A program made the position numbers and the translations under genes. The notes under the pieces were generated by a model that was not told where the DNA came from, did not search any database, and saw nothing but the letters and a program-made list of their open reading frames with translations. A stretch of 64,000 nucleotides of DNA from Glycera tridactyla (taxonomy: Eukaryota). Shown one piece after another: positions 18,737 through 32,330 of this stretch. Location: positions 49,972,001 to 50,036,000 of the forward strand of contig OZ286474.1 in assembly GCA_965644265.1 (NCBI GenBank). The letters are read 5' to 3'. Position 1 is the first letter of the stretch; each line of letters opens with the position of its first letter.

Positions 18737-18828
18737 CAGTGAAACCCGTGACCGAAGACTGCCCTATATGTCATCAAAGATTGGTCTCTCTAAAAGAAGA
18801 GGTCTCTTGTCAATGGTACATTGTATAT
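18737..18828 (+). mobile_element. 5' half of a family-A MITE interrupted by a large insertion
   Basis: CAGTGAAACCCGTG...GGTCTCTTGTCAATGGTACATTGTATAT matches the first half of 1343-1518 and then stops abruptly. Confidence 0.75.
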
Positions 18829-19949
18829 GGCCAATTCTCCGAAATTGGGGCCAGCTGCCGAAAAACGTTTTTGGTGCCGATTCAGCAGCTTTGATCCACG
18901 ATTTGAAGTTTGCAACCAATGTTGAGTGATTCAAGCAATAACTGGGTCGATTTTGGGAGGAATATCTTCATTTTTGGCGAAGTTAGAGACGATTTATTGG
19001 TCAAAAATGGCCATTTTTTACCGCATCAAGCGTAACAAAAGACCCCACCCTTCTTTGCAACGATCTCCTGTCAAACTGACATAATCCTATCATCCCATCA
19101 ATGATTCTATCTAAAGATCGATAGCAGGGCTACATTTTCCAGCCTTAAAATATGCCAAAAGATTGATGTAAATGAGCCCAAAACAGCTGCAAACAGCGTC
19201 ACGGTACGTTATTACCGTTCCGTCAAATTCTAACCAAAGGTTCACTTGTCAATCCAAATCACTTCTGCTGCCTGTCAGCTCGTGCAGTACCATCAAATCA
19301 TTCGAAAAACATGTGGAAATGGCGATTCCAGGCCCATAAAGTGACAGGAATGAAGAGAACATCCTCTAAGAAATCGTTTTCCATCAAAGGGATGACATTT
19401 CCGTCCCTGCCTAACGTCCGAACTAGCAGAGTTTTGCCGTGTTTACTCGCAACGGGCGCCATTTTGGATCGATCAGTACTCTAAATGAGATCCCCATGCA
19501 TCCATGACAAAATATATTTTCCATCTTTTCTTCATTATTTGGCTGAAATTTCCTGCAGAATTGCTTGGATGTCAATCAAAAATCACGGTAACGTACGAAT
19601 TTTTGCATAACATACCTATATACTTAGTGATATTAAACCAAGAGGTCTCAGAATAAAGTCAGTTTTGTTGGTTGGTTGCTCAAAACTTTGATGATCCATG
19701 ATTTTGTATCCATTAATGGTCACATGTGATTATTCTGGTTTAAGAATCTTGAAGCATTGAGTGAATGTATGTTATCTCTGACTCTGATTTTTGAGTGTGG
19801 TTATGTCAGAAATAACATACAAGACACACTATCGACTATGATGGCTAAATACCATCAGTTCCACTTGAGAGTGGTCATTCTTGAAATAAATCACTGATGT
19901 GGATGGATGTATGAAAATGAGGCTGATACTGTGGTTTGATCATGCAGTA

Positions 19950-22900
19950 AAAATATCTTTTTTCATGATGGCATATGTGTGAGTCGTTACATTTGGCAAC
20001 AAAATCATGGTCAAGAAAAATAAGATGATTATAATCATAGCTGAGGAGTTGTTTCAGCTTCAGGTAAGTCAGTTAGAATACACCCTCAATCATTAAAGTG
20101 GAAAGCTGATCTAAGTGAAATCTTGTTTGTTTGTTACCCTTGACCAATGTTTGATAGAGCAGGTAGTCACAAGTAACATAAGTGACATAACAGGAGCTAT
20201 GGTGATGGTAAGATGTTCACCTGCACTAATTGTTGATTTCAGTACTCTGATTCTTTACTCCTGCCAGGTGCACACATGTAGAATCGAAACTGACACTTGT
20301 AGTAATGATTCTGATTCTGATTTGTGACTACATTGGTATGTTATCATTGACCTGACTAATCAAGTAAGAGAGAGTCAGAACTAACATACATGTCATCTAG
20401 ATCCACTGTGATGATGGTCTCAACTTGTTCTTTGGGTATATGGTGTGAATCTTCTGGTATATCAATTTCTTTGGTCCAGGGAAAGCAACTGGCTCCCATG
20501 ATGCGATTCCTCTCTCAGTTTGTATTAAATTATTTTGTGACGTTACTTTGACACTGTGTGATGAATACATGACAGTCACATGTAAAAAACATCACCCAAA
20601 TCAAATAGCCATTTGTCACCTTGAGCTGTCCTCCATCATCAAGATATTCTGTGAGATACTAACTCCTGAAGTTGCCTTATTCCATCACATAAAAAATGCT
20701 AGGTTCTGTGGTACAGATCTGTTCTTCCACGATGGCATCTGTGAGAGTCGTTACATTTGACAATGAAATCATGGTCAAGAATAACAGATGATTATGATCA
20801 TAGCTGAGGAGTCGTTCAGGTTTCACGAAAGTCAGGTAGCATTCACTCTCAATTAAATAGGTGGGATGCCTGTCTGATTGAATTTATCTGAAACAAAAGT
20901 GGTTCAACAAAGCTAATCTAAGTGAAATTGTGTTTGTTTGTTACCCTTGACTTATGTCTAATAGGGTAGGCAGTCACAAGTAACATACATGACATGACAG
21001 GAGCTATGGTGATGGCAAGATGTTCACCTGCACTAATTGTCGATTTCAGTACTCTGATTCTTTACTCCTGCCAGGTGCACACATGTAGAATCGAAACTGA
21101 CACTTGTAGTAATGATTCTGATTCTGATTTGTGATTAGACTACATTGGTATGTTATCATTGAACTGACTAATCAAGTAAGAGAGAGTCAGAACTAACATA
21201 CATGTCATCTAGATCCACTGTGATGATGGTCTCAACTTATTCTTTGGGTATATGGTGTGAATCTTCTGGTATATCAATTTCTTTGGTCCAGGGAAAGCAA
21301 CTGGCTCCCATGATGCGATTCCTCTCTCAGTTTGTATTAAATTATTTTGTGACGTTACTTTGACACTGTGTGATGAATACACGATAGTCACGTGTAACAT
21401 ACATCACCCAAATCAAATAGCCATTTGTCACCTTGAGCTGTCCTCCATCATCAAGATATTCTCTGAGTTACTAACTCCTGAAGTTGCCTTATTCCATCAC
21501 CGTCACATAAAAAATGCTAGGTTCTGTGGTACAGATATATTCTTCCACGATGGCATCTGTGAGAGTCGTTACATTTGACAATGAAATCATGGTCAAGAAT
21601 AACAGATGATTATGATCATAGCTGAGGAGTCGTTCAGGTTGCATGAAAGTTAGGTAGCATTCACTCTCAATTAAATAGGTGGGATGCCTGTCAGATTGAA
21701 TTCATCTGAAACAAAAGTGGTTCAACAAAGCTAATCTAAGTGAAATTGTGTTTGTTTGTTACCCTTGACTTATGTCTAATAGGGTAGGCAGTCACAAGTA
21801 ACATACATGACATGACAGGAGCTATGGTGATGGCAAGATGTTCACCTGCACTAATTGTCGATTTCAGCACTCTGATTCTTTACTCCTGCCAGGTGCACAC
21901 ATGTAGAATCGAAATTGACACTGGTAGTAATGATTCTGATTCTGATTTGTGATTAGACTACATTGGTATGTTATCATTGACCTGACTAATCAAGTAAGAG
22001 AGAGTCAGAACTAACATACATGTCATCTAGATCCACTGTGATGATGGTCTCAACTTATTCTTTGGGTATATGGTGTGAATCTTCTGGTATATCAATTTCT
22101 TTGGTCCAGGGAAAGCAACTGGCTCCCATGATGCGATTCCTCTCTCAGTTTGTATTAAATTATTTTGTGACGTTACTTTGACACTGTGTGATGAATACAT
22201 GATAGTCACGTGTAACATACATCACCCAAATCAAATAGCCATTTGTCACCTTGAGCTGTCCTCCATCATCAAGATATTCTGTGAGTTACTAACTCCTGAA
22301 GTTGCCTTATTCCATCACCGTCACATAAAAAATGCTAGGTTCTGTGGTACAGATATATTCTTCCACGATGGCATCTGTGAGAGTCGTTACATTTGACAAT
22401 GAAATCATGGTCAAGAATAACAGATGATTATGATCATAGCTGAGGAGTCGTTCAGGTTTCACGAAAGTCAGGTAGCATTCACTCTCAATTAAATAGGTGG
22501 GATGCCTGTCAGATTGAATTTATCTGAAACAAAAGTGGTTCAACAAAGCTAATCTAAGTGAAATTGTGTTTGTTTGTTACCCTTGACTTATGTCTAATAG
22601 GGTAGGCAGTCACAAGTAACATACATGACATGACAGGAGCTATGGTGATGGCAAGATGTTCACCTGCACTAATTGTCGATTTCAGCACTCTGATTCTTTA
22701 CTCCTGCCAGGTGCACACATGTAGAATCGAAACTGACACTGGTAGTAATGATTCTGATTCTGATTTGTGATTAGACTACATTGGTATGTTATCATTGAAC
22801 TGACTAATCAAGTAAGAGAGAGTCAGAACTAACATACATGTCATCTAGATCCACTGTGATGATGGTCTCAACTTATTCTTTGGGTATATGGTGTGAATCT

Positions 22901-30545: not shown

Positions 30546-32261
30546 CATTATGTTGATTGAACAATGACAGAATTCATCTTTTGAATTTGTTCTCACTTAC
30601 CATGCCGATTGAGATGGTGTGCCCTCCCCATTTCACTGACTTGGGACAGTCAAATCTATGTAGGCTATTGAATACTAGCAGTGCTTACATTAGGGTAGAT
30701 AGTACAGTAAAGAGCACACAGTTGAAATGAAAAGCACAGAAAGCTAGAGACTACATAGATTAGGTTGGGTTACACAACATCCACCACCACAGCACCAGCA
30801 TGCAAATGAAACCATTCAAGCTACCTGAAACAGATGGAAATGATGCAAACATGAGGAGGAGCCACACACAGTGTTAACATGCAAATAATGTCAAGTACAG
30901 TAGCACTAAGAAGCAAGGAAATCCACCAACCAGTGTCAATTAATCAAGGCATAGCATTATTTCCTCTATTTTCAATGAATACATTTGCCAGGCCACCATG
31001 ACAGGCATTTGGGACACCAAAACCTCAAACCTGGTGGCCCAATGGGCTGCCAGATTCCCTGCAAAATTTCTACCACTGCAAATATAGAAAATAAATGAGT
31101 ATTACATGCAGGCGAGGGAAGGATTTACAATACGAGCTAGGAGGAGATATAAAGTTAAAGTAATGTAATGATAGCACATCACACACATGTAAACTACATT
31201 ATGTTGCCTTGATCACACTGGTCAGCTTGTTGATATGATGCATGCCAGGTGGCATACAACAGAGGCTGATGAAGGATGCAAGGGAATGTAAAGCAAGGTA
31301 GCATGCAGTAAAAGTAAAGCGCAGATTATGATACATGCAGGTAAATAGTGCAGTTTCCCAAATGCTGATGTTAACAGATGGGGTGGGACAGATTTGAGGA
31401 TGAATTGTGTAAGCAAAGGTGACGAAGTTCACAGCAGTCAACAAAAATAAGAGGAGGAATCAAGACAGAATCGCATTATCTATGAAGGCAGACCAGCAAA
31501 AAAAAAATGATATAATGAGTGTAGTGAGTAGAACTCCCTTGGTGATACCCAGGACAATGGCAAGCTGGTCAGCCAATGAATCAACTAATGGAATCCCACA
31601 TCGTGTTAAATTTTCTCAAGGTAGTTTGTCATTAGTAACTGCTCTTGGGTGAAAGTTTCTGGACAAATCCCCATATGATGAATCTATGTGAAAAGACATG
31701 GTGTCAAGCATAACATACATCATGTGAAATAACATACATACCAACTGATGTATCTCATTCTCAAGATTCTCTCAATAACTTAAAAAGATTTGCTTACATA
31801 AACTCATCAGTCTTGAAGTAATCAGAAGAGTCAGTATGGCTTCCATGCTGCAAGTAGTTGGTCGGAGAAAAAAACTTCATGGTACCACCAAAAATGAAGG
31901 CCTGCATGTCATATGACTAGCCCCCACCCTGTCCTATGATCGACTATTACCAGGAAACAATCATTTTTGTGAGAAAAGTTAGATGGGATATTAATGTTTC
32001 ATGGTGAAAAAAATCAACTCAAAGCTATTCATGTGTGTTTTTAATGGATTTCTTCTTAAAAGTAACATACGCAACGGCCGACGACCCCCAAATAGAAAAA
32101 CAGTGATAAATTTTTTTCAGTTCAGCAGATCTCTACCATTTATTCACTATAAAGACCCAACAAGTAGTGGAACTGAATAGTCATATTAGTTTTTGAAACT
32201 TGACTGTTTGAAAAAGTGACCGTACCTGCCATTTTTTGGCCCCATTTTGGGAGAATTGGCC

Positions 32262-32330
32262 ATATGTTGAACAAATAAGCAGTAGTGGTCTCCTTTTGGA
32301 TGTGGTCTCTCGTTTGGGAGTTTCCATTTG
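32262..32330 (+). mobile_element. 3' half of the family-A MITE begun at 18737
   Basis: ATATGTTGAAC...AGTGGTCTCCTTTTGGATGTGGTCTCTCG matches the second half of 1343-1518 (GCGGTCTCCCGTCGGAGGTGGTCTCTCG). Confidence 0.65.

What the first reader, a model, noticed from the sequence alone, without database searches (positions are those of the whole stretch)
18737..32330. A hidden ~13.4 kb transposon-like unit splits one MITE in two
Seen: a family-A MITE stops at ...GGTACATTGT-ATAT|GGCCAATTCTCC (18829). 13.4 kb later GGAGAATTGGCC|ATAT-GTTGAAC... (32261) is followed by the missing second half of such a MITE. The two ends are 23/25 inverted repeats, and the rejoined flanks give a ~157-bp MITE colinear with 1343-1518. 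Known: GG termini with an AT target duplication are described for ISL2EU within the PIF/Harbinger-ISL2EU-Spy group. Inference: the 818-bp array, HINE, hAT MITE, 70-bp minisatellites and inverted arms all sit inside one large element that lacks an obvious transposase and grew by tandem amplification and nesting.
Basis: partly seen in the sequence, partly recalled or inferred. Interest (0 to 1): 0.75.

Follow-up and report, generated by a model that had tools for sequence, protein, structure and literature searches.

The report
Large non-coding transposon splitting a MITE
The 13.4-kb stretch is one copy of a repeated, gene-less cut-and-paste transposon that landed in a small repeat; it is real but ordinary, and its target duplication does not fit the ISL2EU label it was given.

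Summary
Window 18829-32261 (13,433 bp) is bounded by 23/25 inverted termini (GGCCAATTCTCC...), each abutted by ATAT. The rejoined flanks run colinearly through single repeats found at other loci.

The whole genome shows it is a family. The 14-mer ATGGCCAATTCTCC occurs 2,677 times (control 1). At 25 or more loci a left end of the window's type lies 8-12 kb from a right end in the same orientation. One complete relative (10,641 bp) is colinear with the window copy.

A related element of about 1.74 kb with the same two ends is much commoner. No Pfam domain was found in the 65 ORFs scanned (of 99 of 50 aa or more), so the element is non-autonomous.

Most of the architecture is inherited from the family. 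What differs from the one complete relative in hand is a nested, young, Helentron-like element (about 23985-26399), the GT-rich tract it sits in, and the array copy number.

The ISL2EU assignment is not supported. Two or three independent insertions read GGTATAT|element|ATATTTGAC, and the abundant MITE core is GGTATATTTGAC. That argues for a 4-bp ATAT duplication, not ISL2EU's 2-bp AT. None of 20 YqaJ loci sampled, several of which also hold a DDE_Tnp_4 match, carries the terminus. A Sola2-type affinity is possible but untested.

This is a new member of a known kind, of modest interest.

The parts
18737..18828 (+). Left half of the interrupted target repeat (MITE with a CAGTGAAACC... terminus). 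It ends in the left ATAT copy at 18825-18828.
   Evidence: 80-85% identity to MITE copies at window 1339-1416, L021 and L031.
18829..18853 (+). Left terminal inverted repeat (L-type: GGCCAATTCTCCG...).
   Evidence: The first 100 bp are 90-99% identical to 39 other loci listed, out of 142 candidates.
18829..19909 (+). Conserved left-end region of the family.
   Evidence: 87.6% identity to the C1 copy. Positions 18829-19782 are about 73% identical to the left part of the 1.74-kb short element.
20102..23564 (+). Tandem array, period about 807-818 bp, about 4.2 units, 92-96% identity between units.
   Evidence: Self-alignment. The homologous array has about 3.6 units in the C1 copy.
23638..23985 (+). 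GT-rich low-complexity tract, left part. It continues at 26396-26487 on the far side of the nested element.
23985..26399 (+). Nested, young, high-copy element of Helentron/HINE type. It has a 168-182-bp internal array (24118-25579). Its 5' end is inverted near the 3' end, followed by a GC hairpin.
   Evidence: 97-98% identity to the listed matches of more than 3,600 candidate loci. Boundaries come from L062-L064. It is absent from the C1 copy.
26642..26666 (+). Internal third terminus: an inverted copy of the right end, preceded by ATAT.
   Evidence: It is conserved in the C1 copy and the C18 copy.
26642..27807 (+). Left inverted arm, including 4.2 units of the 70-bp minisatellite at 27516-27807.
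   Evidence: (pairs I1, I4, I14, I16, I23).
29605..30549 (+). 70-bp minisatellite, 13.6 units, inverted relative to 27516-27807.
30051..32261 (-). Right inverted arm and conserved right-end region. 31363-32202 has no counterpart in the left arm of this copy.
   Evidence: 30738-32261 is 93.8% identical to the C1 copy.
32237..32261 (-). Right terminal inverted repeat (R-type: GGCCAATTCTCCC...).
   Evidence: The last 900 bp are 91-96% identical to 39 other loci listed, out of 297 candidates.
32262..32330 (+). Right ATAT copy (32262-32265) followed by the right half of the interrupted target repeat. Homology with related repeats continues to about 32400.

Best explanation
Window 18829-32261 is one copy of a large (8-13 kb), multi-copy, non-autonomous cut-and-paste DNA transposon. 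It inserted at an ATAT site inside a MITE-containing repeat and duplicated those four bases. It encodes nothing. It would be moved in trans by a transposase that recognises the 25-bp termini it shares with a much commoner 1.74-kb relative. The large form was already large when it transposed. The left end, the ~810-bp array, an internal inverted copy of the right end, the inverted 70-bp minisatellite arms and the right end are all shared with a copy on another chromosome. After insertion (or late in its lineage) this copy also took in a young Helentron-type element and gained array units. Shown: the boundaries, family membership, lack of coding capacity, colinearity, nesting and the ATAT flanks. 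Inferred: the 4-bp length of the duplication (from recurrent insertions into one MITE site), mobilisation in trans, and the superfamily. On superfamily, a Sola2-type transposase is my leading guess at about 0.35, because 4-bp AWWT duplications including ATAT are reported for Sola2.
For: The terminal 14-mer occurs 2,677 times against 1 for the control. Left and right ends of the window's subtype pair 8-12 kb apart at 25 or more loci. All 37 ends examined read ATAT|GGCC with otherwise unrelated flanks. The 10,641-bp C1 copy is colinear with the window copy. The short element shares both ends. No Pfam hit was found in the 65 ORFs scanned. The rejoined flanks are colinear with single repeats elsewhere. 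Evidence on the duplication: elements at C29:39098934-39100669 and C13:77792283-77800595, and probably C10:104841749-104853214, read GGTATAT|...|ATATTTGAC. GGTATATTTGAC occurs 18 times in the 340 kb in hand, always as the MITE core. GGTATATATTTGAC occurs 0 times in hand and 128 times in the genome. Sola2 duplications of the form AWWT/ATAT are reported in PMC3627910.
Against: No true empty allele was seen. The only public run listed is tiny and holds nothing. The sequences of the three MITE-site insertions could not be fetched, so their MITE context rests on 7 + 9 flanking bases. The C10 pair is ambiguous, because another right end lies 197 bp inside it. The window's own target is too diverged to fix the duplication length. 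No autonomous partner was found, so the superfamily is a guess.
Confidence: 0.85

Rival explanations
1. It is a non-autonomous ISL2EU element (PHIS superfamily). It would be moved by a DDE_Tnp_4 transposase with a YqaJ partner, and its target would be AT inside a required ATATAT.
For: The termini start with GG and AT abuts them, as described for ISL2EU (PMC4482050). The genome holds many DDE_Tnp_4 + YqaJ pairs. Earlier notes report ISL2EU copies up to 13 kb, so my 10-kb windows could have missed distant termini.
Against: ISL2EU flanks read A-AT|GG, whereas here they read T-AT-AT|GG at all 37 ends. Under a 2-bp model the two or three MITE-site insertions would need the variant GGTATATATTTGAC. 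That variant has 128 genomic copies, giving about 0.1 expected insertions. None of 20 YqaJ loci sampled has the terminus or any similarity to the family.
Confidence: 0.15
2. The two ends belong to separate insertions. In this view the real mobile unit is the inner palindromic 26642-32261 element, and 18829 is the end of another element.
For: A terminus at 26642 forms long inverted arms with the right end.
Against: 26642 has the same orientation as 18829, and no right-facing terminus lies between them. The L...inner...R order recurs at other loci. The outer flanks, not the inner ones, rejoin into one repeat.
Confidence: 0.04
3. The copies arose by segmental duplication, not transposition.
For: The elements are large and carry tandem arrays.
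Against: Flanks of 11 large copies are unrelated except for unrelated MITEs more than 100 bp away. Homology stops exactly at GGCC, with ATAT on both sides.
Confidence: 0.02

Closest known systems
ISL2EU (PHIS superfamily) non-autonomous elements
   Same: TIRs start with GG, the target is AT-rich with AT next to the terminus, and autonomous ISL2EU elements are present in the same genome.
   Different: The duplication is inferred to be 4-bp ATAT within T|ATAT|A, not 2-bp AT within A|AT|T. No partner sharing the termini was found.
Sola2 DNA transposons
   Same: 4-bp AT-rich duplications (AWWT, including ATAT) and short TIRs (PMC3627910). Earlier scan notes report Sola-like transposases in this genome (unchecked).
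   Different: No transposase link was shown, and terminal motifs could not be compared with Repbase Sola2 families. Pfam has no Sola profile (PMC5751038).
Satellite-carrying non-autonomous DNA transposons and foldback-like elements of invertebrates
   Same: Short TIRs, no ORF, internal tandem arrays whose copy number varies between copies, and long internal inverted arms. This comparison rests on my own knowledge, not on a test here.
   Different: These elements are unusually long (8-13 kb) for non-autonomous elements that still transpose as a unit. They also carry a third, internal terminus.

Membership tests
Class II TIR (cut-and-paste) non-autonomous transposon | Terminal inverted repeats | tested here: met
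   23/25 match; 0 expected by chance.
Class II TIR (cut-and-paste) non-autonomous transposon | Target-site duplication and many copies with unrelated flanks | tested here: met
   ATAT at all 37 ends, 2,677 termini, unrelated flanks.
Class II TIR (cut-and-paste) non-autonomous transposon | No transposase ORF | tested here: met
   Of 99 stop-to-stop ORFs of 50 aa or more, 65 (one representative of each repeated unit and all the distinct ones) were scanned. None has a transposase domain; the only hit is a chance-level Gin match at E = 0.006.
ISL2EU | 2-bp AT duplication at A|AT|T | tested here: not met
   Flanks read T-ATAT|GG. MITE-site insertions fit a 4-bp ATAT duplication; about 0.1 would be expected under the 2-bp model against 2-3 seen. 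This is an inference from paralogous sites, not from an empty allele.
ISL2EU | TIR begins with GG | tested here: met
   GGCC... at both ends; criterion from PMC4482050.
ISL2EU | Autonomous partner with DDE_Tnp_4 transposase and YqaJ ORF sharing the termini | tested here: inconclusive
   20 YqaJ loci of 10 kb each, several also holding a DDE_Tnp_4 match, show no terminus and no similarity. The sampling was not exhaustive (74 YqaJ and more than 465 DDE_Tnp_4 candidates).
Sola2 | 4-bp AT-rich (AWWT) duplication | tested here: met
   ATAT, inferred as above; criterion from PMC3627910.
Sola2 | Sola2 DDD transposase in an autonomous partner sharing the termini | not testable with these tools
Helentron-associated element (HINE), for the nested element at 23985-26399 | 5' terminus inverted near the 3' end, 3' hairpin, internal tandem repeats, no duplication | tested here: inconclusive
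   GTCCCCCGCCG is matched by CGGCGGGGGAC, followed by a GC hairpin about 20 bp from the 3' end, and there is a 168-182-bp array. The criteria are recalled from memory. Only one left end (L062) and three right ends (L062-L064) outside the window were compared.

The most novel reading that the evidence does not exclude
The family, with its 1.74-kb and 8-13-kb forms, belongs to a cut-and-paste lineage not yet described. This could be a PHIS-related group with a strict 4-bp ATAT duplication, on a par with Pangu or Nuwa, or an unclassified superfamily. Its transposase would tolerate 13-kb cargo and three termini.
Probability: 0.15. Interest if true: 0.5.

Novelty: new member of a known kind. Interest (0 to 1): 0.3.

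Why it matters
It gives a clean annotation for a 13.4-kb block that would otherwise look like unrelated repeats. It defines a repeat family with roughly a hundred large and several hundred short copies and a strict ATAT target. It also shows that long satellite-like arrays are carried around this genome as transposon cargo. The 4-bp versus 2-bp question matters for classifying the family. The biology itself is of a familiar kind.

Tried and rejected
**Fixing the duplication length from the window's own target.** Global alignments of the rejoined flanks, with 0, 2 or 4 bases removed, against related MITEs scored within noise. MAFFT needs an indel at the junction in every case.

**Looking for spanning paralogues.** I tested 16 copies' flanks against all sequence in hand. 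Only microsatellite hits turned up. Repeats shared between flanks lie more than 100 bp from the junctions.

**Looking for an ISL2EU partner.** I fetched 20 YqaJ loci, several also holding a DDE_Tnp_4 match. None has the terminus within 2 mismatches or any BLAST similarity. An AT|GG...CC|AT TIR scan found only an unrelated element in L051. Pairwise boundary mapping of those elements was not crisp.

**A 5.0-kb L...R pair (L033).** It has no ORF above 104 aa.

**The short element.** It has no ORF above 81 aa.

**Reads.** One 99-Mb run was listed and nothing was laid.

**Literature search for the terminus.** It returned only unrelated primers.

**Hairpin potential of the termini.** It is not above shuffles for the two outer ends.

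**A 149-bp indel at 28037-28185.**

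Full report
**Observation.** The element runs from 18829 to 32261 (13,433 bp). The left junction reads ...TTGTATAT|GGCCAATTCTCCGAAATTGGGGCCA. The reverse complement of the right end reads GGCCAATTCTCCCAAAATGGGGCCA and is followed outward by ATATGTTGAAC. That is 23 of 25 matching positions.

In the 64-kb window the 25-mer, with up to 3 mismatches, occurs only at 18829 (+), 26642 (+) and 32261 (-). Shuffles give 0. The N runs of the window (926-1183, 1972-2239, 9921-10122, 35616-35743, 35867-36063) lie outside the finding and were left alone.

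**The flanks are two halves of one repeat.** The left flank matches hundreds of MITE copies (533 candidates). The right flank matches few (16). Rejoined, the flanks align as one continuous HSP with L025 (rejoined positions 8-263), and with L028 and L030 (38-263). They align colinearly in two pieces with L021.

A MAFFT alignment also places them colinear with the window's MITEs at 1343-1518 and 62626-62808. The homology with L021, L025, L028, L029 and L030 extends beyond the MITE termini on both sides. The interrupted MITE therefore sits in a larger repeated unit. Something 13.4 kb long was inserted into one repeat.

**It is a family, and the two ends belong together.** The genome (2.04 Gb, 207 contigs) holds ATGGCCAATTCTCC 2,677 times, against 1 for the reversed control. 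The first 100 bp of the element is 90-99% identical to 39 other loci listed (142 candidates). The first 3 kb is up to 95% identical to other loci, and the last 900 bp up to 96%.

Combining these lists gives at least 25 loci where a left end and a right end in the same orientation lie 8.0-12.2 kb apart. Examples are C13:100618141-100628022, C31:24669276-24678727, C7:55862668-55873795 and C26:38926005-38937368. In the first 80 Mb of contig C1 there are five such large copies. That extrapolates to about a hundred genome-wide.

About half of the listed termini form pairs roughly 1.72-1.74 kb apart. These short elements share the left about 955 bp (about 73% identity to 18829-19782) and the right about 247 bp (about 81% to 32016-32261) with the window element. 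The 18829-type end does pair with a nearby right end, but only in a diverged short subfamily. The window's own subtype pairs 8-12 kb away. The internal terminus at 26642 faces the same way as 18829 and cannot be its partner.

**Flanks.** All 37 ends examined read ATAT|GGCC: ten large copies, the complete C1 copy, five shorter ones including one neighbouring right end in L033, and the window's three termini. In most of them T precedes the ATAT. The sequence further out is unrelated between copies and shows no longer duplication. Flanks of different large copies share nothing except unrelated MITEs more than 100 bp away. This argues for transposition, not segmental duplication.

**Coding capacity.** There are 99 stop-to-stop ORFs of 50 aa or more, and the long ones are translations of tandem repeats. 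I scanned 65 of them against Pfam: one representative of each repeated unit and all the distinct ones. None gave a transposase domain; the only hit is a chance-level Gin match at E = 0.006. The short element and a 5-kb variant also lack ORFs. The family is non-autonomous.

**Anatomy and what is inherited.** One complete relative (C1:46337691-46348331, 10,641 bp, from L038 + L039) is colinear with the window copy. The shared order is:
- the left region (18829-19909, 87.6% identity);
- the ~810-bp array (20102-23564; 4.2 units here, about 3.6 there);
- an internal terminus that is an inverted copy of the right end (26642 here);
- inverted arms carrying a 70-bp minisatellite (27516-27807 against 29605-30549);
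- the right region (30738-32261, 93.8% identity).

The large architecture therefore predates this insertion. The element was already 8 kb or more when it moved.

What the C1 copy lacks is window 23565 to about 26600. That region is a GT-rich tract (23638-23985 and 26396-26487) interrupted by a 2.4-kb element (about 23985-26399). The nested element is 97-98% identical to the listed matches of more than 3,600 candidate loci. It has a 168-182-bp internal array. Its 5' end (GTCCCCCGCCG) is inverted near the 3' end, followed by a GC hairpin about 20 bp from the terminus. A 149-bp indel at 28037-28185 has no TIR or duplication.

**Length of the duplication.** Because ATAT is palindromic, the flanks alone allow 2-bp or 4-bp models. 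The window's own target is too diverged from its relatives to decide. I therefore used the MITE family's core motif, GGTATATTTGAC, as a paralogous empty site.

That motif occurs 18 times in the 340 kb in hand, every time in the MITE context. This extrapolates to about 0.6-1 x 10^5 copies. Ten family termini read GGCC|ATATTTGAC (control 0), and 123 read GGTATAT|GGCC. Of the seven right junctions that could be evaluated against the truncated list, three have a GGTATAT left junction at element distance:
- C29:39098934-39100669 (1,736 bp);
- C13:77792283-77800595 (8,313 bp);
- C10:104841749-104853214 (11.5 kb). This pair is ambiguous because another right end lies 197 bp inside it.

The prior for GGT at the other end is 4.6%. 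Three of seven has a binomial probability of about 0.003.

A 4-bp ATAT duplication restores the consensus GGTATATTTGAC. A 2-bp model needs GGTATATATTTGAC. That variant is absent from the 340 kb in hand and occurs only 128 times in the genome (control 19). There are about 1.6 million ATATAT sites, so about 0.1 insertions would be expected where 2-3 are seen. With about 15 million ATAT sites, the 4-bp model predicts 6-10.

Models in which part of ATAT belongs to the element (TA or TATA duplications) fail on these flanks and on the window's own right flank (ATATG). I conclude a 4-bp ATAT duplication at T|ATAT|A. This is an inference from paralogous sites, not from an empty allele.

**Classification.** According to PMC4482050, ISL2EU has a 2-bp AT duplication at A|AT|T and GG-initial TIRs. 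Its autonomous elements encode a DDE transposase with HTH and THAP domains, and a second ORF with a YqaJ domain. The GG start is met. The duplication is not.

The genome has many DDE_Tnp_4 + YqaJ pairs. None of the 20 representative YqaJ loci of 10 kb that I fetched, several of which also hold a DDE_Tnp_4 match, has the terminus or any similarity to the family. Earlier notes of this scan say ISL2EU copies here can be 13 kb long, so this negative result is not conclusive.

Four-base AT-rich duplications (AWWT, including ATAT) are reported for Sola2 (PMC3627910). Earlier notes mention Sola-like transposases in this genome (unchecked). I file the element only as a non-autonomous TIR transposon of unresolved superfamily: Sola2-like about 0.35, ISL2EU-like about 0.15, other or unknown for the remainder.

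**Mechanism.** The most likely mechanism is trans-mobilisation by a DDE-type transposase that binds the shared 25-bp ends. Staggered cleavage four bases apart at ATAT would be followed by gap repair that duplicates those bases.

Left-end and right-end similarities between copies are discordant. The window's left kb is closest to C13 (97.3%), but its right kb is only 91.4% identical to C13 and closest to C28a, C7 and C26 (95.5-95.6%). This suggests recombination or template switching between copies. Array copy number varies between copies, consistent with unequal exchange.

**Not possible.** No empty allele could be sought. Only one 99-Mb run was listed, and nothing could be laid on the left junction.

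**Verdict.** The ISL2EU label is not supported. The 'grew in place' story is mostly family inheritance plus one nested insertion. This is a new member of a known kind.

Noticed in passing
window 23985-26399; L062-L064: The nested Helentron-like element belongs to a very young, very abundant family: more than 3,600 candidate loci, with the listed matches 97-98% identical over its last 820 bp. The number of its 170-180-bp internal repeats varies between copies.
   Followed up: partly
L001-L020 and the window's element ends: Left-end and right-end similarity matrices of 12 large copies disagree. For example, C1 and C51 are 99.0% identical at the right end but 91.1% at the left. The copies look like mosaics produced by recombination between family members.
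   Followed up: partly
L040 (G000:C1:45326200-45327700): This is a tandem structure with a period of about 910 bp, built from left-end pieces of the family. It includes a solo 62-bp terminal fragment, and two termini lie head to head separated by ATATATAT.
   Followed up: no
L051 (G000:C4:136374100-136384099), about 2881-8507: A 5.6-kb element with a 60-bp inverted repeat encloses a DDE_Tnp_4 match (663-aa open frame) and a YqaJ match (472-aa open frame). It is flanked by AT on both sides and its termini start with AG. It is probably an intact ISL2EU-type element unrelated to the family studied here.
   Followed up: partly
window 18700-18828 + 32262-32400; L021, L025, L028-L030: The interrupted MITE is embedded in a longer repeated unit. 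That unit shares about 35 bp upstream and about 90 bp downstream of the MITE with at least five other loci. In this sub-group the MITE's right terminus is degenerate.
   Followed up: partly
L034 flanks (G000:C1:1423900-1426000): The target of this short copy carries several copies of an 11-bp motif (CCATGAGATAT and its complement) on both sides of the insertion. The motif probably comes from subterminal repeats of another element.
   Followed up: no
window 28558-28917 and 29178-29537: A 360-bp segment is duplicated with a 620-bp period in the centre of the palindromic part. The C1 copy has it only once.
   Followed up: no
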